Virus record (IMG/VR): IMGVR_UViG_3300029983_000007
Coordinates: 124,001-188,000 of that record
Direction: 5' to 3' (one strand)
Length of the DNA: 64,000 bases
Below, piece by piece: positions 25,559-64,000 of the stretch; the first letter of the stretch is position 1; every line of letters begins with the position of its first letter. The notes under the pieces are model-generated. The model ran no database searches and was not told the origin of the DNA. It worked only from the letters and a program-made list of their open reading frames with translations. The position numbers and the translations under genes were made by a program.

Positions 25559-25560
25559 TA

Positions 25561-36971: not shown

Positions 36972-36973
36972 TA

Positions 36974-40748: not shown

Positions 40749-40749
40749 T

Positions 40750-43321: not shown

Positions 43322-43450
43322 ATGAAAGCAAAAGAAATATTAGATAAATATAAAATAAGTAGAAATACTTTATGTAATTGGGTTAAAAAAGGATTGATTG
43401 AAGTAGATAAAACTCCATCTGGTAGATATATTTACATAGATGGAAAATAA
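43322..43450 (+). CDS. 42-aa MerR-like winged HTH resembling the IS607 TnpA DNA-binding domain (not in ORF track)
   Basis: MKAKEILDKYKISRNTLCNWVKKGLIEVDKTPSGRYIYIDGK. Confidence 0.7.
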   Translation: MKAKEILDKYKISRNTLCNWVKKGLIEVDKTPSGRYIYIDGK

Positions 43451-43464
43451 CGACGACGATAAAT

Positions 43465-44394
43465 ATGAAATTCACAACTGAAGATTTTGTTATAAAATCA
43501 AAAGATGCTCATGGAGATAAATATGATTATAGTTTAGTAAATTATATAAATAAAAGAAGTAAAGTTAATATAATTTGTCCAATTCATGGAGAATTTGAAC
43601 AAATTGCATATTATCATTATTATTTTAAACAAGGCTGTCAAAAATGTAAAGTAAATAAGCAATTGACAACTGAAGAATTTATAGAAAGAGCAAAATTAAT
43701 ACATGAAGATAAATATGATTATAGTTTAGTAAACTATATAAATGCATATACTAAAGTTGATATTATTTGTAAAAAACATGGAATTTTTTCAATTCGTCCT
43801 GCTGATCATATTAATAATAAGAAAATTAATTGTAGTATGTGTAGTTTAGGATATAAAAAAAATAATAAAATTACAACTGAAGAATTTATTAAACATGCTA
43901 ATGATGTTCATCATTATAAATATAATTATTCAAAAACAAATTATAAAAATTCAAAATGTAAAATAACAATAATTTGTGAAAAGCATGGTGAATTTGAACA
44001 AAATGCTTCAAGTCATATATCAGGTAAAGGTTGTCCTAATTGTAATACAAGTTTAGGCGAAAATAAAATAGAGAATTATTTAAAAAATAATAATATTGCT
44101 ATTGAAAAACAAAAAAAATTTGAATTATGTAAAAATATTAATTATTTGCCTTTTGATTTTTATTTAACTGATTTTAATATTTGTATTGAGTACGACGGTA
44201 TTCAGCATTTTGAAGTAATTGAATATTTTGGAGGTGAAAATAGTTTAAAAGAAAATAAAATAAGAGATAATATAAAAAATGAATATTGTAAAAATAACAA
44301 TATTCATTTAATTAGAATCTCTTATAAAGAAAAAATAGAAGAAAAATTAAATCACGAATTAGCTAATTTTTTAAATAATTCAGATCTTTTTTGA
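43465..44394 (+). CDS. Homing-endonuclease-like protein (three DUF723-like repeats plus Vsr/DUF559-like nuclease)
   Basis: TTEEFI..A...H..KYDYS.V.Y...IIC..HG.F three times; SLGE, LPFDFY, IEYDGIQH, D..KN.YC...I.LIRI. Confidence 0.75.
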   Translation: MKFTTEDFVIKSKDAHGDKYDYSLVNYINKRSKVNIICPIHGEFEQIAYYHYYFKQGCQKCKVNKQLTTEEFIERAKLIHEDKYDYSLVNYINAYTKVDIICKKHGIFSIRPADHINNKKINCSMCSLGYKKNNKITTEEFIKHANDVHHYKYNYSKTNYKNSKCKITIICEKHGEFEQNASSHISGKGCPNCNTSLGENKIENYLKNNNIAIEKQKKFELCKNINYLPFDFYLTDFNICIEYDGIQHFEVIEYFGGENSLKENKIRDNIKNEYCKNNNIHLIRISYKEKIEEKLNHELANFLNNSDLF

Positions 44395-45678: not shown

Positions 45679-47585
45679 AAAAGTTTATGTTAATAACAAA
45701 AGAAATTGAAATTTTCAATAAAATTATACCTATATCTGAATTGTCTTTACATAGTCATAAAAAAATTGTGGTTAAATGTGATAATTGTGATACTATTAAA
45801 GAGATTACATATCAATCTTATAATAATTCAACTAATAATAATTCAACTGATTATTATTGTCATAATAAGGAATGCATTAATAAAAAAAGAATAATATCAA
45901 CAAGAGAAAAATATGGTGTTGATAATGTTTCTCAATTAAAAATGATAAAAGATAAAAAAATACAAACATGTTTAGATAATTTTGGTGTTAAATTTCCAAC
46001 TCAATCAGATAAAGTAAAATCGAAAAGTAAAAATACAAATTTAGAGAAATATGGAGTAGAATGGCAAACTCAATCTAATAATTTTAAAGAAAAAAGTAAA
46101 ATTACAAATTTAGAAAGATATGGAACTGAAAGCGCAATGCAATCTGATATAATTAAAAATAAGGTTAAAAATACTTGTTTAATTAAATATGATGTAGATT
46201 CATATATGAAAACATATGATTTTAAAAATAAATCTATAATCACAAATTTGAAAAATTTTGGAGTAAAATATCCATCTCAAAATAATCAGATTCAAGATAA
46301 AATAAAAAAAACTAATATTATAAGATATGGTGTAGAAAGACCAACTCAAAATGAAAAAATAAAAATAAAAATAAAAAATTCATATCAGTATAATTTTGGT
46401 GTAAATAATATTAAAAATGTAAAAAATTTGAAAGATAAATTACAAAAAACTAATTTATACAGATATAATACTGATTTTTATTCTCAGTCTGAACAATATA
46501 AAAAAATAGTTAAAAATAGAAAAATTATTTTATTATCCAAAAAATACAACTTAAAAATTGAAGATATAGTAGATGATAATATTGTATTGGTTTGTGATAA
46601 ATGTGATAATAAATTTGTCGCTACATATCAACAATTATACAATAGATTTCTTTATAATACTCCTTTGTGTACTATTTGTAATCCGATTGAATCTTTGTCT
46701 TATGTTGAAACAGAATTTCAAGAATTTATTTCAAAAAATTATAATGGAAAAATATTTTTAAACAATAGAAAAATAATTAAGCCTAATGAATTAGATGTTT
46801 ATTTACCTGAATTAAATTTAGCGTTTGAATTTAATGGATTATATTGGCATTCCGAACGTTATAAAGATGATAATTATCATTTAATAAAAACTGAAATGTG
46901 TGAAAAATTAGATATACAATTGTTGCATATTTGGGAAGATGATTGGAATTTCAAAAAAGATATAGTAAAATCAATAATATTAAATAAATTAGGTAAAAAT
47001 AGTAATAAAATATATGCCAGAAAATGTAAAATAAAAGAAATAAGTGATACTAAATTACTTAGACATTTTCTTGATACTAATCATATTCAAGGTTATATAA
47101 ATTCAAAAATTAATATAGGTTTATTTTATAATGATGAATTATTTAGCCTGATGACTTTTGGTAGCAAACGAAAGATTATGAATTCTTTGTCCAATGATGA
47201 TGAATTTGAAATCTATAGATTTTGTAATAAATTGAATACTAATATTATAGGTGGAGCTAGTAAATTGTTTTCTTTTTTTATTAAAAATTATAATTTTTCA
47301 AAAATCATAAGCTATTCTGATAGATCATATTTTAATGGTAATAATTATTTAAAATTAGGATTTAAATTTTATAGTAATACGTCTCCAAATTATTATTATA
47401 CAATAAAAGGTAAAAGAGAATATAGATTTAAATTTAGAAAAGATATATTAATTAAGGAAGGTTATGATTCTAATAAGACTGAACAACAAATTATGTTAGA
47501 TAGAAATATTTTTAGAATATATAATTCTGGTAATTTGAAATTTATATATGAAAAAAGAAAAAGTTTATGTTAATAACAAAAGAAA
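45679..47585 (+). mobile_element. Endonuclease gene bracketed by 27-bp direct repeats
   Basis: aaaagtttatgttaataacaaaagaaa at 45679-45705 and 47559-47585. Confidence 0.55.
45687..47573 (+). CDS. Free-standing homing-endonuclease-like protein (KYGV repeats, PD-(D/E)xK core, Hef-like C-terminus)
   Basis: About 9 [KR][YF]GV-type repeats; ELDVYLPELNLAFEFNGLYWH; LLHIWEDDW; YSDRS. Confidence 0.75.
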   Translation: MLITKEIEIFNKIIPISELSLHSHKKIVVKCDNCDTIKEITYQSYNNSTNNNSTDYYCHNKECINKKRIISTREKYGVDNVSQLKMIKDKKIQTCLDNFGVKFPTQSDKVKSKSKNTNLEKYGVEWQTQSNNFKEKSKITNLERYGTESAMQSDIIKNKVKNTCLIKYDVDSYMKTYDFKNKSIITNLKNFGVKYPSQNNQIQDKIKKTNIIRYGVERPTQNEKIKIKIKNSYQYNFGVNNIKNVKNLKDKLQKTNLYRYNTDFYSQSEQYKKIVKNRKIILLSKKYNLKIEDIVDDNIVLVCDKCDNKFVATYQQLYNRFLYNTPLCTICNPIESLSYVETEFQEFISKNYNGKIFLNNRKIIKPNELDVYLPELNLAFEFNGLYWHSERYKDDNYHLIKTEMCEKLDIQLLHIWEDDWNFKKDIVKSIILNKLGKNSNKIYARKCKIKEISDTKLLRHFLDTNHIQGYINSKINIGLFYNDELFSLMTFGSKRKIMNSLSNDDEFEIYRFCNKLNTNIIGGASKLFSFFIKNYNFSKIISYSDRSYFNGNNYLKLGFKFYSNTSPNYYYTIKGKREYRFKFRKDILIKEGYDSNKTEQQIMLDRNIFRIYNSGNLKFIYEKRKSLC

Positions 47586-53289: not shown

Positions 53290-55194
53290 TTATTTTATTT
53301 TTTTCTTTAATGAATCAAGTTCTTGTAACCACATATCAGTTTCAGTAGTAGATAATATTTTATCTATCTCAATTTTTATTTTTTCGTAAGTGTCTTTTAA
53401 CTCAGATAATTTTTCTGTTGATAAACTAATTAATGATATATTAATTAAATAATCATAACTATCTTTATACATTTCAATTTTGTTATTTTCAATCTGTGAT
53501 ATTATTTTTTCTTTTGTTTTATTTTCAAAAATTATATCTTTTTTTAATACACAATTGATAAATTTCATTTTATTTATAATATACTTTTTCTGCTCTTCAA
53601 ATTTGTATAATATATTTTTCTTTCTCAAATTATAAAAATTTGTTCTTATTTTAACAAAATCATCAATTATATCATATTGATCTTTATAAAAATATATTTT
53701 ACCTTCTTCATTGAACAAATTCATATTATTAATACTTATATAAGAATCAAGATTGAATTTTTTAATTATCATTTCATCTGTTAATTCACTCAATATATCT
53801 TCTGATATAGTAATTACAATGTTTATGCTATCATCTGTACAATAATTATCATAATCTTTGATGTATTTTTCATCTATGAGTTTATCTAAATATTCAAAGT
53901 ATTTATCATTCCACATCATTATTGGTAATTCTAAAATGCTTAGTTTATTTTTGCCTAATTTCTTAAATATTCCTCTTGATATATATCTTTTATTATTTAA
54001 ATCAGGAATAATTTCACCTTTGAATCCATTATACCAAGGTATTAACTCTATGTTTTTCTTACTCTTTTTCAAATAATTTTGAATATATGTTATTACATCA
54101 GTAGGATTGAATGATGGTATGTTAGTTGACCAACCAGTACCTATACCTTCAGCATTATTTATTAATATCATAGGTATTATTGGTATATAATTTTTTGGCT
54201 CTATTTTGTATCCATCATCAATAAGATATTCTAATAAATCATCATCTTCTGATTTGAATATATATTTAGTTATTTCGTTTAATTTGGTGAATATATATCT
54301 AGGAGCAGATGCGTCTTTTCCTCCTTTTAATCTGGATCCAAATTGTCCTACTGGTTCCAACAGATTTAAGTTGTTTGATCCTATGAAATTTTGAGACATT
54401 GAAATTATTGCTTGTTCTAAAGATGTTGATCCATTATGATATGCTGATAAACTTATAATATCACCACATAATTGGCTTACTTTAATTTCATTTTTAAAAT
54501 TCTTTTTTAGTAAAGTGTAAAGTATTTTTCTTTGAGATGGTTTTAATCCATCTATCATTGATGGTATTGATCTTATATTATCCGCCATACTAAACTCTAT
54601 GAATTCATTATTGAAAAACGAGTCATATGTTTGTTTTGTTTTAAATTTATCAAAATCTACATTAGACTTATAATTTAATAACCATTCTTTCCTATCCTCT
54701 ACTCTTTTTTTGTTGAATGCCAAATCTATCATATCTCTTTCTTTGATTATATCAGATGAGTTGAATTTTATTAAATGCTTATTTAAATCTTTAAAAAATA
54801 ATTTAATCTCAAATGGCTCCAAAGTACCAAGACCTTTTAACCATTTTAAGTGCCATTCAGAATATTCTGTTTTGCTTTTCCATTTTTGATAATCATATGT
54901 ATTATAAAAATATTGTGTTTTACCCTTTTTTGTAGCTTTTACTACTGGGGTAATAAATTGATATAAAAACTCAAGTTGTAATAATTCGGGCCAGTATTTA
55001 TCAAAAAAATTTAGTAGAAGCCCAGATATGTGAGAACCGTCACAATTATGAACCAATATATTATCTATTTTATTTTTAGATATAAAAAACGAATTATCAT
55101 CTTCTACTTTAATGTCATACATTATAGTATCTTTGCTTTCTTTTTTTATTTCATCAATATTTAATATTTCATAATCATTTAGATTTATTTTCAT
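53290..55194 (-). CDS. Type IIA topoisomerase C-half carrying a 50-aa C-intein at its N-terminus
   Basis: MYDIKVEDDNSFF...ILVHN/CDGSHISGLL; KGLGT, RSIPSMIDGLKPSQRK, catalytic ASAPRYIFT, GIGTGWST. Confidence 0.92.
   Translation of the reverse strand: MKINLNDYEILNIDEIKKESKDTIMYDIKVEDDNSFFISKNKIDNILVHNCDGSHISGLLLNFFDKYWPELLQLEFLYQFITPVVKATKKGKTQYFYNTYDYQKWKSKTEYSEWHLKWLKGLGTLEPFEIKLFFKDLNKHLIKFNSSDIIKERDMIDLAFNKKRVEDRKEWLLNYKSNVDFDKFKTKQTYDSFFNNEFIEFSMADNIRSIPSMIDGLKPSQRKILYTLLKKNFKNEIKVSQLCGDIISLSAYHNGSTSLEQAIISMSQNFIGSNNLNLLEPVGQFGSRLKGGKDASAPRYIFTKLNEITKYIFKSEDDDLLEYLIDDGYKIEPKNYIPIIPMILINNAEGIGTGWSTNIPSFNPTDVITYIQNYLKKSKKNIELIPWYNGFKGEIIPDLNNKRYISRGIFKKLGKNKLSILELPIMMWNDKYFEYLDKLIDEKYIKDYDNYCTDDSINIVITISEDILSELTDEMIIKKFNLDSYISINNMNLFNEEGKIYFYKDQYDIIDDFVKIRTNFYNLRKKNILYKFEEQKKYIINKMKFINCVLKKDIIFENKTKEKIISQIENNKIEMYKDSYDYLINISLISLSTEKLSELKDTYEKIKIEIDKILSTTETDMWLQELDSLKKKIK
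55045..55194 (-). other. Split intein, C-fragment (IntC)
   Basis: Block F YDIKV, block G VHN, followed by +1 Cys. Confidence 0.9.
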
Positions 55195-55345
55195 CTTTAT
55201 TCATATCTTTTTTTATTAAGTGCTCAATATATTTTGATTTGTTTATATTATTATCTTCACAAATTTCATCTAATATATTATCTAATTCAATATTTATAGA
55301 TACTGATAATGTTTTCTTTTTGTCTGTTATTGTTGGTCTTCCCAT
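55175..55345 (-). CDS. 56-aa ribbon-helix-helix protein with GRP hook (not in ORF track)
   Basis: MGRPTITDKKKTLSVSINIELDNILDEICEDNNINKSKYIEHLIKKDM...; overlaps the topo C-half start. Confidence 0.75.
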   Translation of the reverse strand: MGRPTITDKKKTLSVSINIELDNILDEICEDNNINKSKYIEHLIKKDMNKDENKSK

Positions 55346-55359
55346 TGTGTTTTTGTTTT

Positions 55360-55425
55360 TATATATAAAATATTAACTAATTTGTTTGAAAATAGATAAA
55401 AATGAAACTTTTTTATTTATATATA
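55360..55425. promoter_or_regulatory. Divergent promoter region of the RHH cassette
   Basis: Minus strand AAAC-N18-TATATA at 55360-55387; plus strand TTTATATATA at 55416-55425. Confidence 0.6.
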
Positions 55426-55444
55426 CTATAAAAATGCTAAGAAT

Positions 55445-55606
55445 ATGAAAAAACCAATCACAAAAAGAAAAGTTTCTATCTCAATAAATAGTGAAGTATA
55501 TAATTATATTGAAGATAGATTTGAAAATAAATCTAAATATATTGAATATTTAATATATCAAGATATATTAAAATGTGGCAAATTAAAAAAAGATATAATA
55601 TTATGA
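55445..55606 (+). CDS. 53-aa ribbon-helix-helix protein (not in ORF track)
   Basis: MKKPITKRKVSISINSEVYNYIEDRFENKSKYIEYLIYQDIL...; ATGA-coupled to the endonuclease. Confidence 0.75.
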   Translation: MKKPITKRKVSISINSEVYNYIEDRFENKSKYIEYLIYQDILKCGKLKKDIIL

Positions 55607-56430
55607 TATTAGATACTGAAATATTATTTAATGTGAGTAATAAAAATAAAGCACATTTGATATGCAAAGGTTATGATGTGACTCACAAAGATGTTATAAT
55701 TAAAGTTGAAGATTTGCCTACATATAGTCATTATAAAATAAAAGTAAAATGCGATATATGTGGAACTGAAAAATATTTAGGAAATCATAAATATATGAAA
55801 AACACAAGACTTAATACTAAAGATTATTGTTGTTGTCAAAAATGTGGAGTTAATAAATTACTTGATACATTTAAAGAAAATTACGGGTGTATAAGTAGTC
55901 AACATCCTAATATCAAATTAAAGCAAGAGAAAACAAATATCGAAAGATATGGTAGTAAATCTTGTCAATCAAATAAAGAAATTAAACAAAAATCATATGA
56001 TACTATGATAAAAAAATATGGTGTAAAATATTCATTACAGAATAATGAAATAAAAAAAAAGTTTATGTTAAAAATAGATGATACTGTTAAAAAAACTAAT
56101 ATTACAAAAGTTCAAAGAGGAGTAATGGTAGATTATGATAATTTTAGTTCATTTAAAGATTATAGAAAATTAGTTGATATAGAAACAAGAAGAAACAAAA
56201 AACTATTATATGAAGAATGGAATGGACTTGATTTTTATGATAATGAATATATTGGTGAAAATTTAAATTTAAATTATAGAGATAAATTATATCCATCTAT
56301 AGATCATAAAATATCAATATTGAATGGATTTTTAGATGATATTGATCCTTATAGTATTGGTAATATTACGAATTTGTGTATAACAACAAGAACAAATAAC
56401 TCAAAGAAGAATTCTAAAAATGTGTTCTAA
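55603..56430 (+). CDS. HNH-like homing endonuclease lying antisense between the split-intein halves
   Basis: Start ATG 55603; VKCDICG, YG repeats, PSIDHKIS...NLCITTRTNNSKK. Confidence 0.75.
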   Translation: MILDTEILFNVSNKNKAHLICKGYDVTHKDVIIKVEDLPTYSHYKIKVKCDICGTEKYLGNHKYMKNTRLNTKDYCCCQKCGVNKLLDTFKENYGCISSQHPNIKLKQEKTNIERYGSKSCQSNKEIKQKSYDTMIKKYGVKYSLQNNEIKKKFMLKIDDTVKKTNITKVQRGVMVDYDNFSSFKDYRKLVDIETRRNKKLLYEEWNGLDFYDNEYIGENLNLNYRDKLYPSIDHKISILNGFLDDIDPYSIGNITNLCITTRTNNSKKNSKNVF

Positions 56431-56442
56431 ATATTATTAAAT

Positions 56443-56476
56443 AAAAGAAAGAGATAAATAATTATCTCTTTCTTTT
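56443..56476. terminator. Bidirectional terminator between the endonuclease and the topo N-half
   Basis: aaaagaaagagataa-ataa-ttatctctttctttt. Confidence 0.75.
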
Positions 56477-58264
56477 TAATATTTTATCAGTAATTAATAT
56501 TTCTTTGACTTTTACTAATATAATTTCATTGTTTCTTAATATTGGAATCTCATGATTTTCACTAAATGTATATTCATATCCATTGATATTTAATTTTATT
56601 ATATTAGTCTTGTGAGTTTCAATTATATTGAGTATTTTTTTCCATTCATTGTTGTGTGTTAAAACTTCATCGTCATAATTAATATCTTTTATTGCTACAT
56701 ATCCTCTTTTAGTTAGAACTAACGTATTTTCTTCTATACAATCAGCATCTGTCATCATTATAACTTTACCGTATCTTAATGTTCTTGTTGATGTGTATTG
56801 TTTACCAAATTCTAATCCTAATATTTTTATAATTGAAGTAATTTCATCGTTTTCTCTCATTTTTTGTATAGAAACATCCCTTACATTCAATGGTTTACCC
56901 TTAAGAGGGTATATTCCATAATAGTCATTTCCAACAACTGATAATCCTGCACGAGCTGTTGATTTTGCTGAATCTCCTTCAGTTAGTATTAATCCACATT
57001 TCATGCTATGTGGTTGCTTACCTGCCATATTAGCATCATCAAGCTTCGCTATTTTAACTTTAATTTTCTGATTATTCTGAGTTGATTTCTTAGCATCTTG
57101 TAATTCTTTGAATGATGCAAAATTTACTATGTCATTTTTTATTTGAGATGACATAAGTTTTTTGATAAATGAATCTGAAACAGTTACATCTTTGATGATT
57201 TCAGTTATCATTCTTGTAGTTAGATTTTCTTTTGTTTGTGTTTCAAATGATGGATTAGGAATTTTACAACTAAGAAATAAAAATAAATGATTTTTGATCA
57301 TTGATTGTTTAACGCTTGTTGATTTTATTTTATCATCAAGTGATTTGGTGATTTGATTAGTTATGTAATTAACATGAGTACCTCCAATATGAGTAGATAT
57401 TCCATTTACCATTGATACTTGTTGAAACATATCATTAGGTGTGCGTGCTATACCGACTTCCCAGTTCTCATTTATTTTTTCGTAGAAGAACTCTTCATCA
57501 TCATTGATAAACATCTTCATGTAATCTTTAAATGACTTGATAGGTATTAATACATCATTATAGTAGACTTTAACTCCAGTGCTATAAGCTGCAATGTCAA
57601 TAGCTCGTTTTAAAAATATTGATTGAATTTCATCTGTTATTTCAGTTAGATTAAATTTTTCAAAATCTGGATAATATGTAATTTTTGTGTAATTTTTGTC
57701 TGATGTAGTTATTTTTGGCTTAGTTTTATCAGACATATTATTGGTGAATGTTTGAATGTATTTATGCTTACCATCTGCAGTTTCAATTGTAAATTTCTTT
57801 GAGAATATGTTAGTTGTTTTTATTCCAATTCCATGTGTACCACCAACCATCCTTTTATCATCGTCCGTGAAATTCTCCCCCGTGAGCAAATTTCCGAAAA
57901 TCAACTCACACACATAAATTTTATGTTCTTTGTGCATAACAATAGGTACTCCTGGTCCGTCGTTTTCAATTGTTATGTGGTCTTTATCTACGTTTATCTT
58001 GATGTATTTGACTTGACCATCTGTTCTGATGTAATGATCTGATGCATTGGTTAATGCTTCATCGAATAGTTTAATAAATCCTGCATTATAATTTACTTCT
58101 TTATATACAAATTTGTTGTCTTTAATTTCATTAATATCTTCAAATACATACATTTTGGTTGGTTCAGTATATATATTTCCAATATACATTCCTGGTTTTT
58201 TTAATACGTGTTCAATTGGTGTTAATTTCTTATATCTATCCTCTATTGTTTTTTTATTCATCAA
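56462..58264 (-). CDS. Type IIA topoisomerase N-half (GHKL ATPase plus part of TOPRIM) ending in a 92-aa N-intein
   Basis: HVLKKPGMYIG, DEALTNA.D, NDGPGVP, GGTHGIG.K, LTEGDSAK, PLKGKPLNV, IMMTDAD/CIEENT. Confidence 0.92.
   Translation of the reverse strand: MMNKKTIEDRYKKLTPIEHVLKKPGMYIGNIYTEPTKMYVFEDINEIKDNKFVYKEVNYNAGFIKLFDEALTNASDHYIRTDGQVKYIKINVDKDHITIENDGPGVPIVMHKEHKIYVCELIFGNLLTGENFTDDDKRMVGGTHGIGIKTTNIFSKKFTIETADGKHKYIQTFTNNMSDKTKPKITTSDKNYTKITYYPDFEKFNLTEITDEIQSIFLKRAIDIAAYSTGVKVYYNDVLIPIKSFKDYMKMFINDDEEFFYEKINENWEVGIARTPNDMFQQVSMVNGISTHIGGTHVNYITNQITKSLDDKIKSTSVKQSMIKNHLFLFLSCKIPNPSFETQTKENLTTRMITEIIKDVTVSDSFIKKLMSSQIKNDIVNFASFKELQDAKKSTQNNQKIKVKIAKLDDANMAGKQPHSMKCGLILTEGDSAKSTARAGLSVVGNDYYGIYPLKGKPLNVRDVSIQKMRENDEITSIIKILGLEFGKQYTSTRTLRYGKVIMMTDADCIEENTLVLTKRGYVAIKDINYDDEVLTHNNEWKKILNIIETHKTNIIKLNINGYEYTFSENHEIPILRNNEIILVKVKEILITDKILKRKR
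56465..56740 (-). other. Split intein, N-fragment (IntN)
   Basis: Block A CIEENTLV, GYVAIKDI..DDEVLTH, block B FSENH, then stop. Confidence 0.9.
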
Positions 58265-58286
58265 ATTTTAATTAATTTTTACATTG

Positions 58287-58314
58287 TATATATCTTAAAA
58301 ATTATGTAAAGTTT
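58287..58314 (-). promoter_or_regulatory. Putative middle promoter AAAC-N18-TATATA
   Basis: Upstream of the topo N-half. Confidence 0.65.
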
Positions 58315-58372
58315 TGATTTATAATATAAAGAGTGAAAATATGATGATTTACAATGATATATATGTTAAAAA

Positions 58373-58687
58373 TTAAATATTATTTAATTTTTCTATCTTC
58401 AATTTTCTACATATTTTTTGATGGTATGATTCTATAAATTTTTCAAAATCTTCAAAATTTAGAAATTCTTGTTTAAGTTCAACATGAGGATAAGGTGCTG
58501 TACTATATATGTTTTTATGAAAACATATTACTTCATTAGAGTATTCATCCATATATGAATTTATGTTTATATAGCCACCATTTTCTCTTATGATATAATA
58601 ATTTGAACATCTAAGTTTATAGCCAATTGATGTTATAAGTTTTAATACACGGTCATCAATGTAATCTTTGCTTAAATGATCATTCAT
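58373..58687 (-). CDS. Small protein, RxxKL tag class, paralog of the next gene
   Basis: KLI.SIGYK, ENGGYININ, EFLNF; ends RKLKIEKLNNI. Confidence 0.7.
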   Translation of the reverse strand: MNDHLSKDYIDDRVLKLITSIGYKLRCSNYYIIRENGGYININSYMDEYSNEVICFHKNIYSTAPYPHVELKQEFLNFEDFEKFIESYHQKICRKLKIEKLNNI

Positions 58688-58983
58688 AATAAGTTTTTTA
58701 ATTTTAGTTTTCTGAATATTCTTTTATGATATTCTTTTATGAATGTTTCAAAATTTTTAAAATTTAAAAATTCTTTTGAATAAACTTTGATTTCATTTGC
58801 TATTTGGTAATATTTACTGAATGATATAATTTTATCACCATCATTTAGTACATAAAAATTTATATTTATATATCCATTTTCTTCAAATAACGTAAATTTA
58901 TCAAATCTATTTTTATAACCTATAGACTCAATTAATTTGATGCATTTTTTGTCGTAATATTCTCTATATCTAAAATCAATCAT
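58684..58983 (-). CDS. Small protein, RxxKL tag class
   Basis: Ends RKLKLKNLL; AAAC-N18-TATATA at 59014-59041. Confidence 0.7.
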   Translation of the reverse strand: MIDFRYREYYDKKCIKLIESIGYKNRFDKFTLFEENGYININFYVLNDGDKIISFSKYYQIANEIKVYSKEFLNFKNFETFIKEYHKRIFRKLKLKNLL

Positions 58984-59233
58984 GTGATGTTATTATGCTT
59001 ATAATTAAAAATTTATATATTATTATTTTGATGACATGTTTTTGATATTTGTTAAATAAATGACTAAAATATATAATAAATATGTTTTTATTTTTTTTAT
59101 TGAAATAGTTTATTTACTTTTGTGAAGTAATTGAATTATAATAATATTTATAATAATATTATTAATTAGTTTTTAATTTAAATTATTATGTATATCTTTG
59201 TATTGTAATATAAAAACTTAATAATGAATTTTT

Positions 59234-59431
59234 ATGAATGAACTAAAAATTGCAAAAATATTAAAACACACTATGATATTAGAATATGTGTGTGAAAAAA
59301 ATAAAACTAAAATAACTTCAATAATTGAAAATCCTGAAATAAGTGATGGACAATATTATGAGGACTGGCATTATAAGTATATTAAAATAAAATGTGAATC
59401 TTGTGGTGAATTACATAAATTTGAAATTTAA
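59234..59431 (+). CDS. Small zinc-ribbon-like protein
   Basis: YVCEK...IKCESCGELH; -7 boxes at 59115-59122 and 59193-59200. Confidence 0.6.
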   Translation: MNELKIAKILKHTMILEYVCEKNKTKITSIIENPEISDGQYYEDWHYKYIKIKCESCGELHKFEI

Positions 59432-59458
59432 TTATTTAATTATTTAATTGTATAAAAA

Positions 59459-59947
59459 ATGAACTTAAAAGAAAAAATTGAAATTAGGAAAGCTTATTTT
59501 AAAGCTAAGAAACAAAAATTCCGTCGTGATACACAAAGGTTGGCTATCAAATTTTTTAAGTTTTTTTCTATTAGCAATAATAGAATTGATCAAGTCAACA
59601 ACAGTGAAAATGAAGTAATAAGTTTTTGTAGACGACTTATTAGAAATCAAGAAACTGTTTTGTCAATGACTCCAACAACACACAAAAGGATAATTGAAAA
59701 CAAGAAAACTGGTACCTATATTATAATTAGGAATATGCAAGTTCTGGTTTATCATAAAGGAACTGCATTTCCTCCAACTTTAATTTCCGATAAAAAATAT
59801 CAATATCTTTTAGAAATATTTGATGATAAAAAAGAAACAATTGAACAAGATAAAGAAAATGATATTCAAAATGAAGTAAAGCATTCATTTAAAAAAATCT
59901 ATGATTCTTTGGTTGAACTTGATAATATTGAAAACTCTATAAAATAA
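59459..59947 (+). CDS. Hypothetical protein
   Basis: 162-aa ORF in operon. Confidence 0.7.
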   Translation: MNLKEKIEIRKAYFKAKKQKFRRDTQRLAIKFFKFFSISNNRIDQVNNSENEVISFCRRLIRNQETVLSMTPTTHKRIIENKKTGTYIIIRNMQVLVYHKGTAFPPTLISDKKYQYLLEIFDDKKETIEQDKENDIQNEVKHSFKKIYDSLVELDNIENSIK

Positions 59948-59952
59948 TAAAA

Positions 59953-60255
59953 ATGAAAAAGATTAATAAAAATAAGTTCAAGACTTTATATTATACTGGA
60001 TTGGGTATGTATTCTGCTGTAGCATTTTGTGTTATTATTGTTGTTGTATCTGTTATTACATTTGCTTATAACAAAATTGAAGATAAGCATAAAGCTGAAA
60101 TTGATGCTGCTTCTTATAAAACAGAAATTCCATTAGTTAAGAAGATTATTTATGATACTATTCCAGTGTATGATACAATAAGACCTGTACCTCACTACAG
60201 AACAAAGACTTTTTCTCCTATTATTACAAATAAAGAATTGAAAGATAGCTTATAA
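59953..60255 (+). CDS. Single-pass membrane protein
   Basis: One TM helix; YDTI repeats. Confidence 0.65.
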   Translation: MKKINKNKFKTLYYTGLGMYSAVAFCVIIVVVSVITFAYNKIEDKHKAEIDAASYKTEIPLVKKIIYDTIPVYDTIRPVPHYRTKTFSPIITNKELKDSL

Positions 60256-60273
60256 TTTTTAAATCTAAATTAC

Positions 60274-60474
60274 ATGAAAAAGATAACATTTAATAGAGTG
60301 ATTATAACGTTAGTTTGCATTACTTATTTAATTACTGCTATATTATTTATTTTAGCATTTCCTTTATCAGGTAAAGACAATCAAGTGTATCTAGATTATA
60401 CTGTAATATTTGGTATGATTGTACCTGTAATTTTAGCAGCAATTTTTTTAATTTGTACAATTTGGACAGATTAA
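60274..60474 (+). CDS. Small two-helix membrane protein
   Basis: Two hydrophobic segments. Confidence 0.65.
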   Translation: MKKITFNRVIITLVCITYLITAILFILAFPLSGKDNQVYLDYTVIFGMIVPVILAAIFLICTIWTD

Positions 60475-60502
60475 TAATGTAACATTATTTGATAATTTTA
60501 TT

Positions 60503-60531
60503 AAAAAAGTCAGGCTTAGACCTGACTTTTT
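60503..60531. terminator. Bidirectional terminator
   Basis: aaaaaagtcagg-cttaga-cctgactttttt; a degenerate inverted copy follows at about 60536-60563. Confidence 0.8.
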
Positions 60532-60547
60532 TAATTTTTTGTCAGGA

Positions 60548-60757
60548 CTAAGCTTGACTTTTTATTATGTTATCTAACTTTTTCTTTCTTTCAATTCGTA
60601 AATCATACTTATCAAAATCTTTTGTGTATTTATCAATATTACACCAATTGTCGTTTTCGTATATGTATAATGAATAATTGTTTTTATTATAATATAAATC
60701 TCCTTCAATTGGATTATCGGAAAGTTCTGATATTTTATCGTAATTGAATATAGGCAT
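60548..60757 (-). CDS. Small protein, RxxKL tag class
   Basis: NPIEGDLYYN...YIY...W; ends ERKKKLDNIIKSQA. Confidence 0.65.
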   Translation of the reverse strand: MPIFNYDKISELSDNPIEGDLYYNKNNYSLYIYENDNWCNIDKYTKDFDKYDLRIERKKKLDNIIKSQA

Positions 60758-61043
60758 TTTCTATCTCTTTTAACTTTATTAGTTTTGATATTCTATCAAA
60801 TCTATTTATGTTTATTTTTAAATCCTCATGAGTATACATAGTTCTTATGTAAACATCAACAATTGGATATTCACAATTGACTCTATAATTCAATATTTTT
60901 GAACTGTTAATATATTCATTTGTTAAATATTTTGAAATGTCATACATTAATTGAGCATCTTTAAATTTTGGATTTAACACTAAATTGTTAACTAAATTAT
61001 TTAGATTTTCTGTTATCTCATCGTACATTTTTTTATCTTCCAT
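60735..61043 (-). CDS. Small protein, RxxKL tag class
   Basis: DRISKLIKLKEIE near the C-terminus. Confidence 0.65.
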   Translation of the reverse strand: MEDKKMYDEITENLNNLVNNLVLNPKFKDAQLMYDISKYLTNEYINSSKILNYRVNCEYPIVDVYIRTMYTHEDLKININRFDRISKLIKLKEIENAYIQLR

Positions 61044-61569
61044 TTAATGATATTAATTTTAATCTTCTTTTTTCTGTTTTAATTCTTTCTGGTAGATTTA
61101 TTATAGTTTTTTCATAATCAACTCCTTCTTTTCTTCTATTAAATTTTCCAGTTATCATATCTATACCTGATTTTTTATTTATTAATTCATTATAGAAAAA
61201 AATTTCATTGTTTTTGAAATTTTCTATTTTGCTACAACCTTTGATTGGATTTGATATATTGTCAAATACTAATTTACCATCTATGTAAAATTTGTATATA
61301 GTTGTGTTGTTTATGTAACAATCATGTGCAACATTATATCTAGTGTGAGCTGGACCATAAAGATTGTGTAGCTTACCATGTTTTAAATGGTACTCATAAC
61401 CATCAAATAATATATGAGTAATATCCTTCAAATTGAACTCTATGTACTCATATAAGTCATAAAATGACTTAAAATCTTTTTTATATAATCTACCTGTGAC
61501 GGCATCTATAGATAAAAAAGATTCAAAGTCAATCTTACATTCAACATCTAAAAATTTATACATTATCAT
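61033..61569 (-). CDS. Hypothetical protein with LHxxxGPA motif, RxxKL tag class
   Basis: HGKLHNLYGPA; ends KRRLKLISLNGR. Confidence 0.65.
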   Translation of the reverse strand: MIMYKFLDVECKIDFESFLSIDAVTGRLYKKDFKSFYDLYEYIEFNLKDITHILFDGYEYHLKHGKLHNLYGPAHTRYNVAHDCYINNTTIYKFYIDGKLVFDNISNPIKGCSKIENFKNNEIFFYNELINKKSGIDMITGKFNRRKEGVDYEKTIINLPERIKTEKRRLKLISLNGR

Positions 61570-61816
61570 GTGATAACAATTTATTTAATTTTTGTTTTCT
61601 GATTTCTTTTTCAGTGTAGAAATAATCAGGAAAATTCCAACGAACATTTGAACGTCCTTTTTCTTTAGAGAAAACTTCAAATCCTGCATCATCTGACATC
61701 ATAACATGATATTCTACTATTTTAGATATCTCATAATAATGATCTTTGTATATACATGAATCTGATGTTGTTAATGATTTTTTACAAAGATACTTTTTAT
61801 TGAGCAGGTATTTCAT
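61556..61816 (-). CDS. Small beta-rich family member, RxxKL tag class
   Basis: YLCKK...Y.I...YFYTEKEIRKQKLNKL. Confidence 0.7.
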   Translation of the reverse strand: MKYLLNKKYLCKKSLTTSDSCIYKDHYYEISKIVEYHVMMSDDAGFEVFSKEKGRSNVRWNFPDYFYTEKEIRKQKLNKLLSHDNV

Positions 61817-62063
61817 AATTTAATTTATTTAATTTATCTTTTCTTTCATCTTTTATTGTTCCAAAGTATTCATAAAAATAATCATAATGCATATTATTCT
61901 CTAATGAGAATACTATATTACCAATATCATTAGTCATTATTACTTCACCATGATGCTGATATATAACTCTGTATTTTTTGCCTTTTTCAAAATAGGTTCT
62001 ATTATTCATTATAGATATTATTGGTTTTTTACAATAATATAAATCATCAATCTTTGGATTCAT
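61797..62063 (-). CDS. Small beta-rich family member, RxxKL tag class
   Basis: YYCKK...FEKGKKY...YFGTIKDERKDKLNKL. Confidence 0.7.
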   Translation of the reverse strand: MNPKIDDLYYCKKPIISIMNNRTYFEKGKKYRVIYQHHGEVIMTNDIGNIVFSLENNMHYDYFYEYFGTIKDERKDKLNKLNYEIPAQ

Positions 62064-62346
62064 TATCTAAATCACTTTTTAAATAATTAGCTAATCTTTG
62101 AATTTTATATGCATCATCAGGATTAAAAATAAATTCATCAAATGCTCCATATTTGCACCTATATCCAAATATATATTTAACTCCGTGTTTTAATCTACTC
62201 CAAAATGAACCTCTATTTAAAAGTACATGAGCATAGCACATTGGATAACTTTTACCAGTTTCATTTGTATCTTCATCATATAAGAACACAATTTGATGAT
62301 CTGTTGAATGACAACTACAAATTAATATATCTTCTTTCTTTTTCAT
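62047..62346 (-). CDS. Hypothetical protein (CxCxxxxH)
   Basis: LICSCHSTDHQ; FWSRLK..VKYIFGY. Confidence 0.7.
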   Translation of the reverse strand: MKKKEDILICSCHSTDHQIVFLYDEDTNETGKSYPMCYAHVLLNRGSFWSRLKHGVKYIFGYRCKYGAFDEFIFNPDDAYKIQRLANYLKSDLDNESKD

Positions 62347-62513
62347 AATTTAATATTTTTTTTTAATAATTCTTCTAACTCGTTTATAGTATTTTCACAT
62401 AATATAGTTTGTTCTCTTACTCTAAATCCTCTTGTCCACGAGTATTTTTTGTCTGTTAAATGTAATTGTTCTTTTCTTAATTCAATTAATCTATTTTCAA
62501 TCAATTCTTCCAT
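62343..62513 (-). CDS. 56-aa hypothetical protein (not in ORF track)
   Basis: MEELIENRLIELRKEQL...; fills the gap and is ATGA-coupled to the next gene. Confidence 0.55.
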   Translation of the reverse strand: MEELIENRLIELRKEQLHLTDKKYSWTRGFRVREQTILCENTINELEELLKKNIKL

Positions 62514-62811
62514 TATTTAATTTTTCTAATTTTCTTTTTCTATATCCTTGATGATCACTAAAATATTCAGAAAATAGATTGTTTTTTCTATCTGTTTCAA
62601 GCCAAAATGCATACTTATCATCATCAGTATAATTTATTGATATTATAACTTCATCTGATTTGCTATCATTGTACATAGTTTTAGTAGCAGATTTTGTGTG
62701 ATTAACAGTGTATATGTTATTTTCTTTGAATATTAATTTTTCATCAGATTTTCTATATACATCTTTTGTACAATAAACTTTATCTCCTGCGTTTAGTATT
62801 TTTACTGACAT
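62497..62811 (-). CDS. Small beta-rich family member, RxxKL tag class
   Basis: GDKVYC...EYF...YRKRKLEKL. Confidence 0.7.
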   Translation of the reverse strand: MSVKILNAGDKVYCTKDVYRKSDEKLIFKENNIYTVNHTKSATKTMYNDSKSDEVIISINYTDDDKYAFWLETDRKNNLFSEYFSDHQGYRKRKLEKLNNGRID

Positions 62812-63077
62812 TCTATAAATAATTTTTCTAATTTCATTTTTCTATATTCTTTTATGCTCATAAAATATTCATAATAATTCCATCCATATGCATTTTTTAG
62901 ATTAAGAGTATAAAAAAACCCATTACTTTCAATTGAAACTAAACTTTCTATACCTTTCTGCTTATACACAAAATGAACAATGTATACATTGTTCATTTTC
63001 ATGACTAATGTATTATCAAAATCATAAAAATCATTTATGCAATAAACTTTATCTCCTTGCTTTGGTATTAACTTCAT
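62802..63077 (-). CDS. Small beta-rich family member, RxxKL tag class
   Basis: GDKVYC...EYF...YRKMKLEKL. Confidence 0.7.
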   Translation of the reverse strand: MKLIPKQGDKVYCINDFYDFDNTLVMKMNNVYIVHFVYKQKGIESLVSIESNGFFYTLNLKNAYGWNYYEYFMSIKEYRKMKLEKLFIECQ

Positions 63078-63400
63078 TGTTTCAATATATTTAATAATTT
63101 TCTTTTTCTTTTTTTACTAATCCATTTATTTCTATTAAAATCAAATACATTTTTTATAATATTGTCACTTGGATTATTTGTGACAGTTTTGCATTCTTTT
63201 AAATCAATCCAACAATGTGATATTCCATCTTCTGAAACATAACCATAAAAACCAGGTAGATAACAACGAGTATCATGATCTGGTATATCATATTCAGTAA
63301 TCAATTTAAATTCTTGAACCTTACCAATAGGTTCAACTGTTGAATTGAATGTAAAGTGAATAATATTACAATCTTTTATCCATTCTTCTATTTCTGTCAT
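63074..63400 (-). CDS. Small protein, RxxKL tag class
   Basis: Ends KKRKRKLLNILKQ. Confidence 0.7.
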   Translation of the reverse strand: MTEIEEWIKDCNIIHFTFNSTVEPIGKVQEFKLITEYDIPDHDTRCYLPGFYGYVSEDGISHCWIDLKECKTVTNNPSDNIIKNVFDFNRNKWISKKRKRKLLNILKQ

Positions 63401-63432
63401 ACTATATAAAGTTAATTAAAAATAATGAGATT

Positions 63433-63609
63433 TTACTCATTATTATCATTTTTTTTGTTATCTTTGTTTATTAAGTATGTAATATATTCTGATTTTGATA
63501 AATTATTTTCAATTAAATAAGTTTCTAATTTTTCATTTAACTCTTTGTCAATAGTAATACTCATCGTTGTTTTTTTATTTTCCTTTTTTGGTCTACCTAC
63601 GTCTGACAT
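63433..63609 (-). CDS. 58-aa ribbon-helix-helix protein with GRP hook (not in ORF track)
   Basis: MSDVGRPKKENKKTTMSITIDKELNEKLETYLIENNLSKSEYITYLINKD...; homolog of 55175-55345. Confidence 0.75.
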   Translation of the reverse strand: MSDVGRPKKENKKTTMSITIDKELNEKLETYLIENNLSKSEYITYLINKDNKKNDNNE

Positions 63610-63622
63610 ATTGTTTTTTATT

Positions 63623-63667
63623 TTTATAGTAAAATAGAAAAAAATGGTTTATTTTTATTTATATATA
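63623..63667. promoter_or_regulatory. Divergent promoter region of the second RHH cassette
   Basis: Minus strand AAAC-N18-TATAAA at 63623-63650; plus strand TTTATATATA at 63658-63667. Confidence 0.6.
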
Positions 63668-63688
63668 ACAATAAAATAACAATTTAAT

Positions 63689-63853
63689 ATGAAGAAAATT
63701 AAAACTAAAGTAGCAATATCAATCGCAATAGATAAAGGAATGAATGAATATCTATCAGAAAACTTTGAAAATAAGTCAAAATATATTGAGCATTTGATAT
63801 ATAAAGATTTAGTTGAAAATAATATAATAGAAGAAAATAAATATAAAATGTAA
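63689..63853 (+). CDS. 54-aa ribbon-helix-helix protein (not in ORF track)
   Basis: MKKIKTKVAISIAIDKGMNEYLSENFENKSKYIEHLIYKDL...; homolog of 55445-55606. Confidence 0.75.
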   Translation: MKKIKTKVAISIAIDKGMNEYLSENFENKSKYIEHLIYKDLVENNIIEENKYKM

Positions 63854-64000
63854 TGGGTAAAAAATCAAAAAATGATGTTTTTATTAAAAAGGCAATAGAG
63901 GTACATGGTAATAAATATGACTATAGTTTAGTAGAATATAAACATAATCAAACAAATGTTGAAATTGTGTGTAATGATTGCGGATATAAGTTTCTAAGGA
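63853..64000 (+). CDS. DUF723-like repeat endonuclease, 5' part (runs off the window)
   Basis: TAATG-coupled start; FIKKAIEVHGNKYDYSLVEY...VEIVCNDCG. Confidence 0.65.
   Translation, partial: MGKKSKNDVFIKKAIEVHGNKYDYSLVEYKHNQTNVEIVCNDCGYKFLR

What the first reader, a model, noticed from the sequence alone, without database searches (positions are those of the whole stretch)
55175..64000. Recurring cassette: divergent RHH gene pair plus interchangeable endonuclease
Seen: the same architecture occurs twice (55175-56430 and 63433-64000), and the RHH genes are missed by the ORF track. Leftward is an RHH-A with a GRP hook behind AAAC-N18-TATAWA. Rightward is an RHH-B (FENKSKYIE.LIY.D) behind TTTTATTTATATATA, translationally coupled (ATGA or TAATG) to an endonuclease-type gene. 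The cargo differs: HNH-like in one, DUF723-repeat in the other. Inference: a self-regulating mobile element family whose two-repressor switch times nuclease expression, and whose outward promoter offsets polar effects on the invaded operon.
Basis: partly seen in the sequence, partly recalled or inferred. Interest (0 to 1): 0.72.

Follow-up and report, generated by a model that had tools for sequence, protein, structure and literature searches.

The report
Two-repressor control module on phage homing endonucleases
A huge AT-rich phage from peat carries a small portable unit, two back-to-back repressor-type genes with promoter-like sequences between them, attached to interchangeable DNA-cutting "selfish" genes; one copy sits inside an essential topoisomerase gene that is split by a split intein.

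Summary
The window is part of a 330-kb, 24% GC huge-phage record. It holds five divergent ribbon-helix-helix (RHH) pairs, each with RHH-B overlapping the start of a homing-endonuclease gene, plus two single RHH-nuclease units. Thirty of 36 related loci in other viral contigs show the same pair.

The ~0.42-kb RHH-A/spacer/RHH-B block is a separable module. DNA similarity between phages stops exactly at the RHH-B stop codon. RHH-B proteins 93-98% identical precede unrelated nucleases.

The whole three-gene unit is present or absent between relatives. The Topo II site and the helicase-side site are empty in close relatives.

Cassette 1 lies in the gap of a Topo II gene fractured by a split intein (IntN 92 aa, IntC 50 aa). 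RHH-A overlaps the start of the downstream half by 20 nt.

Repression, promoter use and nuclease cleavage are inferred, not shown. I found no earlier description. It is a new variant of known kinds: free-standing homing endonucleases, fractured genes, and Arc/Mnt-type control.

The parts
53290..55044 (-). Topo II C-extein (rest of TOPRIM plus the breakage-reunion domain)
   Evidence: Pfam TOPRIM_C 2e-31 and DNA_topoisoIV 4e-105. Aligns from residue 49-52 onward to uninterrupted Topo II of LR756501 and L055.
55045..55194 (-). C-terminal split-intein half (IntC, 50 aa, ends ...ILVHN followed by Cys+1)
   Evidence: These 50 residues are absent from uninterrupted homologues. Block F/G-like motifs are present. 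TIGR01443 intein_Cterm matches residues 26-51 at 12.5 bits, below its 15.6 cut-off.
55175..55345 (-). RHH-A1 (56 aa, N-terminal GRP/AT-hook-like arm); its last 20 nt overlap the IntC-TopoC start
   Evidence: Pfam RepB-RCR_reg 25.8 bits, above the 21-bit cut-off. PHROG repressor / Arc-like / CopG-like families. dN/dS 0.08-0.24. Overlap measured.
55346..55444 (.). 99-bp divergent control region. A-side AAAC-N18-TATATA at 55360-55387 (minus strand). B-side conserved motif at 55387-55434, including TTTTATTTATATATA at 55411-55425 and TACTAT at 55424-55429.
   Evidence: Motifs are conserved across cassettes. The external-only weight matrix hits here at 25.2 bits.
55445..55606 (+). RHH-B1 (53 aa)
   Evidence: Family HMM E 1e-22. 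B clade supported 96/93 in the tree. dN/dS 0.28-0.35.
55603..56430 (+). Homing-endonuclease gene N1: treble-clef Zn finger, DUF7487 repeats, HNH-like C-terminus. Its start overlaps the RHH-B1 stop (ATGA).
   Evidence: Pfam DUF7487. PHROG 12131 and 3339 'homing endonuclease'. Invariant D234-H235...N257...N266 among orthologues. HNH clusters appear among ESM Atlas neighbours, a lead only.
56443..56476 (.). Perfect 15-bp-stem palindrome followed by T-runs. Likely bidirectional terminator between the convergent nuclease and TopoN-IntN genes.
   Evidence: 1 found against 0.0 expected in shuffles.
56465..56740 (-). N-terminal split-intein half (IntN, 92 aa, starts Cys1-Ile-Glu-Glu-Asn-Thr)
   Evidence: Pfam Hint_2 E 2e-4, below its cut-off. 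The residues are absent from uninterrupted homologues. The insertion point lies inside the TOPRIM motif MTDxD|xDGSHI.
56741..58261 (-). Topo II N-extein (ATPase, transducer, first part of TOPRIM)
   Evidence: Pfam HATPase_c, DNA_gyraseB, Toprim. 53-77% identical to relatives.
63433..63609 (-). RHH-A2 (58 aa, GRPKK arm)
   Evidence: Family HMM E 2e-16. The left edge of the indel against L058 lies within about 15 nt of its stop codon.
63610..63688 (.). 79-bp divergent control region. A-side motif at 63623-63650. B-side motif at 63629-63676.
   Evidence: (30.0 bits).
63689..63853 (+). RHH-B2 (54 aa)
   Evidence: Family HMM E 3e-21.
63853..64000 (+). 5' end of homing-endonuclease gene N2 (432 aa; runs 1151 nt past the window end). 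Five DUF723/DUF4379 repeats plus a Vsr-like catalytic domain.
   Evidence: Pfam DUF723 and DUF4379. PHROG 559, 9084 and 7140. The AF2 model (pLDDT 76.5) matches the I-Bth0305I catalytic domain 3r3p (prob 1.00, TM 0.57-0.61) and Vsr.

Best explanation
The thing is a three-gene insertion unit of huge AT-rich phages: [RHH-A leftward][80-140 bp control region][RHH-B rightward, overlapping a free-standing homing-endonuclease gene].

Shown:
- The two RHH genes are ancient paralogues that co-diverge as a linked pair.
- With the spacer they form a ~0.42-kb module that recombines with at least seven nuclease classes, exactly at the RHH-B stop / nuclease start.
- The whole unit is present or absent at otherwise collinear sites in relatives.
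- It sits in or beside DNA-metabolism genes.

Inferred mechanism:
- The spacer carries two back-to-back promoters.
- The rightward promoter makes one mRNA for RHH-B and the nuclease. The nuclease is translated only by coupling to RHH-B.
- RHH-B dimers then bind the spacer and shut the promoter. Each infection therefore gives a short, low pulse of a potentially toxic nuclease, enough to cut cassette-free co-infecting genomes and drive homing.
- The leftward promoter makes RHH-A plus the gene downstream of the insertion. This restores expression of what the insertion cut off from its own promoter.
- In cassette 1 that downstream gene is IntC-TopoII-C. The two Topo II halves are then rejoined by protein trans-splicing.
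For: RHH fold:
- Pfam, PHROG and a PDB profile search match NikR, CopG and SvtR RHH domains.
- Both genes are under purifying selection.

Recurrence:
- 5 pairs plus 2 single units in the genome.
- 30 of 36 foreign loci carry the pair.
- The A and B trees mirror each other.

Module boundaries:
- Similarity of c1 to L018, L019, L021 and L025 covers only RHH-A, spacer and RHH-B, and ends at the RHH-B stop.
- 45 of 54 RHH-B pairs that are at least 60% identical carry different cargo classes.

Cargo is nuclease-type:
- Pfam, PHROG and PADLOC 'HEase' hits, and a fold match to I-Bth0305I.

Indel status:
- Topo II is uninterrupted in LR756501 and in L055/L056 (75% aa identity), but fractured at the same codon in L043, L049 and L057.
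- Cassette 2 is missing from the 50-nt helicase/next-gene gap in L058-L066. Those phages carry another cassette 5' of the helicase, where this genome is empty.

Control region:
- The motif is specific to cassettes, not a general phage promoter.
- Significant 11-bp tandem repeats abut the -35-like element in c3, L030 and L034.

Read-out:
- RHH-A stop to next-gene gap is 30 nt or less in 15 of 29 loci.
- L057 keeps the A-side motif but not the RHH-A ORF.

Precedent:
- An RHH 'Arc' represses the promoter of the TnpA/TnpB genes in IS605 elements (bioRxiv 10.64898/2026.09.24.754181).
- Family members also precede the methylase and the putative nuclease of R-M-like pairs in L033 and L036.
Against: - No binding, transcription or cleavage data exist. 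No RNA run was listed.
- The host and its RNA polymerase are unknown. A generic sigma-70 scan is uninformative at 24% GC.
- Tandem repeats are significant in only 3 of 25 spacers.
- Spacer-protein covariation cannot be told apart from linkage.
- About 10 of about 17 nuclease-like genes in this genome lack an RHH (several are decayed), and L057 keeps the nuclease without RHH-B. The module is therefore dispensable.
- In cassette 2 the downstream gene keeps its own upstream sequence, so read-out is not always needed.
- The foreign loci were found with an RHH-B motif, which is an ascertainment bias, and many may be related lineages.
Confidence: 0.6

Rival explanations
1. Bistable two-repressor switch of the P22 immI type. 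RHH-A and RHH-B cross-repress each other's promoters through shared operators, so the cassette flips between a 'nuclease on' and a 'nuclease off' state at a set time in infection.
For: The architecture matches mnt <- -> arc-ant: divergent RHH genes, back-to-back promoter-like elements 20-35 bp apart, and the second RHH co-transcribed with the effector. A and B co-diverge as a pair.
Against: Nothing distinguishes cross-regulation from two independent autoregulated promoters. Single RHH-B-nuclease units (s6, s8) and pairs separated by inserted genes (L018, L019) exist. In L033 and L036 the two RHH genes are convergent and far apart.
Confidence: 0.2
2. Toxin-antitoxin-like pair. RHH-B is an antitoxin that binds and neutralises the nuclease protein.
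For: The gene order and 4-nt overlap are those of type II TA operons. There is a weak NCBIfam hit to an RHH-type MazE antitoxin model (E 0.001, far below cut-off).
Against: RHH-B has only about 8-10 residues beyond the RHH fold. The tail ...GLLKKEIIL is conserved in front of three unrelated nuclease families, and RHH-B proteins 93-98% identical precede unrelated cargo. The complex prediction gave no answer, which is not evidence either way. There are no PADLOC hits.
Confidence: 0.08
3. The RHH pair is a resident phage regulatory locus, and endonuclease genes merely home to the site just downstream of RHH-B. The pair is then a landing pad, not part of the mobile unit.
For: The cargo junction is always exactly at the RHH-B stop. 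Nuclease relatives occur beside the same helicase gene without a detected pair: L067 has none, and L069 has only a divergent RHH-like ORF.
Against: Empty sites lack the RHH genes as well as the nuclease. The pair occurs at five unrelated places in one genome.
Confidence: 0.1

Closest known systems
[quoted passage not shown] 2009, PMC2677866)
   Same: A conserved DNA-metabolism enzyme gene is broken at an intein. Each half carries one intein part. An endonuclease gene lies in the gap. The Vsr-like endonuclease family is present in the same phage. A coding overlap occurs at the start of the downstream half.
   Different: The host protein is Topo II, a word that does not occur in that paper. The nuclease is antisense to the host gene. 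The element that overlaps the downstream half is a co-oriented RHH gene with its own promoter-like motif, not the nuclease 3' end. That paper's control elements were 5' hairpins with T4-late-type promoters, not repressor genes.
Phage P22 immI region (mnt / arc-ant); recalled from my own knowledge
   Same: Two RHH repressor genes are transcribed divergently from a short control region. The second is co-transcribed with an effector gene.
   Different: The effector here is a homing endonuclease, not an antirepressor. The unit is multi-copy and mobile. Homology to Arc is only weak (phrog_582, E 3e-4). Operators are not defined.
RHH 'Arc' repressor of IS605-family transposons (bioRxiv 10.64898/2026.09.24.754181)
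   Same: A compact mobile element carries an RHH protein that represses the promoter driving its own nuclease/transposase genes.
   Different: That element is a transposon of cellular genomes with TnpA/TnpB. It has one RHH, not a divergent pair. It has no read-out function and no interchangeable protein-only nucleases.
Free-standing phage homing endonucleases with layered expression control (T4 seg/mob genes, Aeh1 mobE)
   Same: GIY-YIG, HNH and Vsr-like genes are inserted between or within conserved genes, and their expression is kept low.
   Different: Known controls are promoters, terminators and RNA hairpins (as cited in PMC2677866). No dedicated trans-acting repressor genes were described.
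Controller (C) proteins of restriction-modification systems; recalled from my own knowledge
   Same: A small DNA-binding regulator sits upstream of, and often overlaps, a nuclease gene and autoregulates the operon. Members of this RHH family also precede R-M-like genes in L033, L036 and L043.
   Different: C proteins are helix-turn-helix proteins, not RHH.

Membership tests
Ribbon-helix-helix (MetJ/Arc/CopG) DNA-binding superfamily | Sequence-profile match to the ~45-aa strand-helix-helix domain | tested here: met
   A1 scores 25.8 bits to PF10723, above the 21-bit cut-off. The family profile matches the NikR RHH domain at E 1.7e-5, SvtR at 0.007 and CopG at 0.06. PHROG Arc-like and CopG-like families hit. 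B members join only through the family HMM and tblastn.
Ribbon-helix-helix (MetJ/Arc/CopG) DNA-binding superfamily | Obligate dimer whose paired strands read the major groove of repeated operator subsites | not testable with these tools
11-bp tandem repeats are significant in only 3 spacers.
Free-standing homing endonuclease gene | Encodes a nuclease of a recognised homing-endonuclease family | tested here: met
   GIY-YIG and NUMOD by Pfam. PHROG and PADLOC 'homing endonuclease' hits. The N2 model matches the I-Bth0305I and Vsr folds. The HNH assignment of N1 rests on motif and PHROG only, because its AF2 model was poor.
Free-standing homing endonuclease gene | Presence/absence polymorphism at collinear sites in relatives, in or next to conserved genes | tested here: met
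   The Topo II site is empty in L055/L056 and LR756501. The helicase 3' site is empty in L058-L066. The reciprocal helicase 5' site is empty here.
Free-standing homing endonuclease gene | Cleaves the cassette-free allele and is copied in by repair | not testable with these tools
   This needs an enzyme assay or co-infection crosses.
Fractured gene (split intein + endonuclease) | Host gene broken at an intein; halves carry IntN (Cys1, block B) and IntC (block F, HN + Cys+1); exteins are collinear with uninterrupted homologues | tested here: met
   One search shows MTDAD|C...(92 aa) and (50 aa)...VHN|CDGSHI here, against MTDSDNDGSHI in L055. The Pfam Hint_2 and TIGR01443 hits are both below their cut-offs.
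Fractured gene (split intein + endonuclease) | Endonuclease co-oriented with the host gene, with its 3' end overlapping the downstream half | tested here: not met
   The nuclease is on the opposite strand. RHH-A supplies the 20-nt overlap.
Fractured gene (split intein + endonuclease) | Protein trans-splicing restores the enzyme | not testable with these tools
   Inferred from intact catalytic residues (Cys1, HN, Cys+1) and from conservation of both halves in four phages.
P22 immI-type two-RHH switch | Divergent RHH genes, the second in an operon with the effector | tested here: met
P22 immI-type two-RHH switch | Cross-repression through overlapping operators | not testable with these tools
   No binding or expression data.
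Type II toxin-antitoxin | Antitoxin has a toxin-binding extension matched to its toxin | tested here: not met
   The tail is at most about 10 aa. Near-identical RHH-B proteins pair with unrelated nucleases.
Type II toxin-antitoxin | Direct antitoxin-toxin complex | tested here: inconclusive
   The prediction scored 0.04, and the tool states this is no evidence either way.

The most novel reading that the evidence does not exclude
The RHH pair is a general-purpose 'insertion adaptor' that selfish nucleases trade among themselves. One arm doses the nuclease. The other arm re-promotes whatever gene the insertion has decapitated. This would let endonuclease genes land inside essential genes and operons, including inside inteins, and so would explain how contiguous inteins become split inteins and genes become fractured without a lethal intermediate.
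Probability: 0.3. Interest if true: 0.8.

Novelty: new variant of a known kind. Interest (0 to 1): 0.68.

Why it matters
- Homing endonucleases must be expressed, but only a little, and their insertions must not silence neighbouring genes. A dedicated, exchangeable two-repressor module would be a new answer to both problems and a new layer in the biology of selfish DNA in phages.
- It offers a concrete route for the long-puzzling step by which an intein-containing essential gene is broken into two genes without loss of function.
- Practically, it yields a new natural split intein (92 + 50 aa, Cys1/Cys+1) in a type II topoisomerase. It also yields a family of tiny repressor/promoter pairs from AT-rich phages and several uncharacterised nuclease families with defined empty target sites.

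Tried and rejected
- Complex prediction of 2 x RHH-B with nuclease N1 scored 0.04. The tool says this is no evidence either way.
- The AF2 model of N1 from a 4-sequence alignment had pLDDT 53 and was unusable, so no fold search was run.
- PDB sequence and profile searches with N1 and N2 gave only spurious hits.
- No RNA run was listed for the cassette.
- Laying contigs of four peat DNA runs gave low, fragmentary coverage. The loose ends came mostly from paralogous cassettes. One odd joint (56460 to 55072, depth 2) cannot be interpreted.
- The generic sigma-70 scan found fewer sites than in shuffles and is uninformative at 24% GC.
- A search for tandem operator repeats was significant in only 3 of 25 spacers.
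- tblastn of RHH-B and RHH-A against 50,697 GenBank phage records gave no hit for B and only two marginal hits for A.
- A scan of 185,579 prokaryote species genomes gave one hit, on a 5.7-kb MAG contig.
- Rejected readings: chance ORFs, an anti-phage defence system and a giant eukaryotic virus (the nearest relatives are the LR7565xx huge phages).

Full report
**What the window is.** The window is bases 124001-188000 of a 330,208-bp linear IMG/VR virus record with 24% GC. Its family-B DNA polymerase and type II topoisomerase are closest to the 460-735 kb 'uncultured phage' records LR756500-LR756504, at 52-56% identity to the closest (LR756501), and then to jumbo phages. It is therefore a huge phage of a bacterial host, not a eukaryotic giant virus. 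Near-identical DNA stands in many peat metagenome runs.

- RHH-A1 (55175-55345, minus) and RHH-B1 (55445-55606, plus) are separated by 99 bp. RHH-A2 (63433-63609, minus) and RHH-B2 (63689-63853, plus) are separated by 79 bp.
- The RHH-B stops overlap the nuclease starts, as ATGA at 55603 and TAATG at 63853. Homologues of nuclease 1 begin at exactly that methionine.
- A1 passes Pfam's own threshold for an RHH family.
- A profile of the 12 family members matches the RHH domains of NikR (E 1.7e-5), SvtR and CopG.
- PHROG gives 'transcriptional repressor', Arc-like and CopG-like families.
- Both genes evolve under purifying selection, with dN/dS 0.03-0.35 against homologues in other contigs.

**How often it recurs.**
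- In this genome there are five divergent pairs. In genome coordinates they are c1 179175-180430, c2 187433-189151, c3 930-2676, c4 70628-71934 and c5 211365-212834 (inverted).
- There are also two units with RHH-B only, and one RHH domain inside a 263-aa protein.
- A motif scan of viral contigs returned 36 loci from other records, at 22-38% GC. Thirty of them carry a divergent second RHH 30-360 bp upstream.
- In a tree, 37 B proteins form one well-supported clade, and the A proteins form two groups whose sub-clades mirror those of their B partners. The pair is thus an old duplication inherited as a unit.
- No homologue of RHH-B was found in 50,697 GenBank phage records. Only one was found in 185,579 prokaryote species genomes.

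**The cargo.**
- Nuclease 1 has a treble-clef zinc finger, DUF7487 repeats and a C-terminus with invariant D-H...N...N. PHROG calls its families homing endonucleases.
- Nuclease 2 (432 aa, mostly beyond the window end) has five DUF723/DUF4379 repeats. Its C-terminal domain, in an AlphaFold model of pLDDT 76.5, matches the catalytic domain of homing endonuclease I-Bth0305I (prob 1.00, TM 0.57-0.61) and Vsr.
- Elsewhere the cargo is HNH-NUMOD, DUF7487 with a PD-(D/E)XK-like end, GIY-YIG, GIY-NUMOD, a WTKEKC-repeat family (phrog_20046), an endonuclease-VII-like protein, or decayed remnants of these. In three loci it is a DNA methyltransferase of an R-M-like pair.

**The RHH pair is a separable module.**
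- DNA similarity of cassette 1 to L018, L019, L021 and L025 (73-82%) covers only RHH-A, the spacer and RHH-B. It ends at the RHH-B stop codon.
- L018 and L019 have RHH-B proteins differing by one residue but unrelated nucleases. L028 and L029 are 93% identical with different cargo.
- Of 54 RHH-B pairs at least 60% identical, 45 carry different cargo classes.

**The whole unit is an insertion/deletion polymorphism.**
- Cassette 1 lies between TopoN-IntN (56462-58261, minus) and IntC-TopoC (53290-55194, minus).
- Uninterrupted Topo II genes exist in LR756501 (1082 aa) and in L055/L056 (1098 aa, about 75% identical). There the sequence runs MTDSD-N-DGSHI. Here it reads MTDAD | Cys...(92 aa) stop and Met...(50 aa)...VHN | Cys-DGSHI.
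- L043, L049 and L057 are fractured at the same codon. L043 and L057 keep the orthologous HNH-like nuclease. L049 has a CapR/DUF723-type nuclease instead. L043 has also acquired an EcoRI-like R-M pair in the gap.
- L057 has lost both RHH genes. It keeps the last codons of RHH-B before the nuclease, and the AAAC-N18-TATATA motif 85 nt before IntC-TopoC.
- Cassette 2 is absent from L058-L066 (helicase 88% identical). There the helicase stop is followed within 50 nt by the orthologue of window 63074-63400.
- The edges of the extra 1.7 kb here lie at the helicase stop and within about 15 nt of the RHH-A2 stop. No target duplication is seen.
- Those phages carry a different RHH-pair cassette on the 5' side of the helicase, where this genome has 86 nt.

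**The control region.**
- On the B side, a conserved block runs roughly AAAATRG-N-TGACTT-N16-TA(C/G)(T/A)AT, with an invariant ATATATA, and ends 22-31 nt before the ATG in 23 of 26 anchored spacers.
- A weight matrix built only from foreign loci ranks this genome's five pairs and two single units within its eight best hits in 660 kb of two-strand sequence. The other of the eight, and a further strong hit, lie beside two other endonuclease genes, one of them decayed.
- It is therefore a cassette-specific signal, not the phage's general promoter.
- On the A side, AAAC-N16-18-TATAWA lies about 15-20 nt before the ATG in most loci.
- Between the two -35-like elements are A-rich AAAAT(A/G) repeats. 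Tandem 11-bp repeats are significant only in c3, L030 and L034 (p <= 0.007).
- That these are promoters and operators is inference.

**Read-out to the left.** RHH-A1 overlaps the IntC-TopoC start by 20 nt. Across 29 scored loci, the RHH-A stop overlaps or lies within 30 nt of the next co-directional gene in 15, and within 100 nt in 22. Cassette c5, not in that count, also overlaps its downstream gene. The downstream genes are unrelated to one another: peptidases, PolB, GNAT, aldolase, a methylase.

**Mechanism proposed (inferred).**
- Each infection starts without RHH protein.
- The rightward promoter fires and gives RHH-B plus a little nuclease by translational coupling.
- RHH-B then closes the promoter, giving a short pulse of nuclease.
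- The leftward promoter, tuned by RHH-A, re-expresses the gene cut off by the insertion.
- In cassette 1 the Topo II halves are rejoined by trans-splicing.
- A palindromic terminator at 56443-56476 separates the convergent nuclease and TopoN genes.

**Rivals.**
- An antitoxin role for RHH-B is unlikely. Its tail is about 8-10 residues and stays the same in front of unrelated nucleases. The complex prediction was uninformative.
- A P22-type cross-repressing switch is possible but not distinguishable.
- A 'landing pad' reading is contradicted by empty sites that lack the RHH genes too.

**Comparison with the literature.** Dassa et al. 2009 described fractured genes with co-oriented endonucleases, 5' hairpins and late-promoter elements. 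They did not describe repressor genes or Topo II. No paper in the searched library combines ribbon-helix-helix, homing endonuclease and free-standing. The nearest functional precedent is the RHH 'Arc' repressor of IS605 transposons.

**Limits.**
- There are no expression, binding or cleavage data.
- The host is unknown.
- The foreign loci were ascertained through RHH-B and may be phylogenetically clustered.
- About 10 of about 17 nuclease-like genes in this genome have no RHH, and several of those are decayed.

Noticed in passing
whole genome; in the window e.g. 17967-18722(+), 25211-26231(-), 34663-37976(-), 40356-40980(+): 102 of 604 ORFs of at least 60 aa end in the C-terminal tetrapeptide K[F/Y]N[L/I], against 0.12 expected from shuffles. 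Many begin MKH[I/L]K.[F/Y]E. This is either a very large paralogous family or a shared C-terminal sorting or processing signal.
   Followed up: partly
window 58373-58983 and 60548-63400 (minus strand); also genome 190969-192951: Runs of small paralogous genes whose products end in an R.KKLEKL-like motif. Many are linked by 4-nt overlaps.
   Followed up: no
genome 111471-112952(-) and 23642-25003(+), outside the window: The family-B DNA polymerase is split into two genes 87 kb apart, without an intein. The N half ends next to an RHH-B + DUF7487 nuclease unit. The C half lies beside two endonuclease genes.
   Followed up: partly
window 43322-43450(+) and 43465-44394(+): A Vsr-like/DUF723 endonuclease gene is preceded by a 42-aa ORF that looks like a helix-turn-helix protein, not an RHH. 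This would be a different small regulator in the same position.
   Followed up: no
window 21026-21984(+), 26837-27868(-), 45681-46211(+); genome 22003-22971, 32349-33278, 58884-60167: Further endonuclease-like genes without an RHH. Several are broken into short ORFs (decayed copies). At genome 59984-60167 there is a decayed cassette spacer next to a truncated GIY-YIG gene.
   Followed up: partly
genome 211365-212356(-), cassette c5: The DUF7487 nuclease of cassette c5 is in two reading frames (187-aa ORF plus a C-terminal piece), while both RHH genes are intact.
   Followed up: no
L043:1871-3665: In a relative, the gap of the fractured Topo II gene also holds an EcoRI-like restriction endonuclease gene and a D12 adenine methylase gene. 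The methylase lies directly downstream of RHH-A.
   Followed up: partly
L036:3992-5733 and L033:3989-5912: Members of the same RHH family flank R-M-like pairs in convergent orientation: RHH-B then methylase, and RHH-A then a 178-192 aa ORF. In L036 the pair lies between ribonucleotide-reductase genes.
   Followed up: partly
window 55072 / 56460: In one peat run a contig joins 56460 back to 55072 with four extra letters (depth 2). This could be a rearranged relative or an artefact, and was not interpretable.
   Followed up: no
genome 70152-70627(-), next to cassette c4: The GNAT acetyltransferase gene downstream of RHH-A4 has no ATG before residue ~60 of the fold, so it may be 5'-truncated. In L040 an intact GNAT gene overlaps RHH-A by 4 nt at what looks like the same site, with a different nuclease.
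   Followed up: partly
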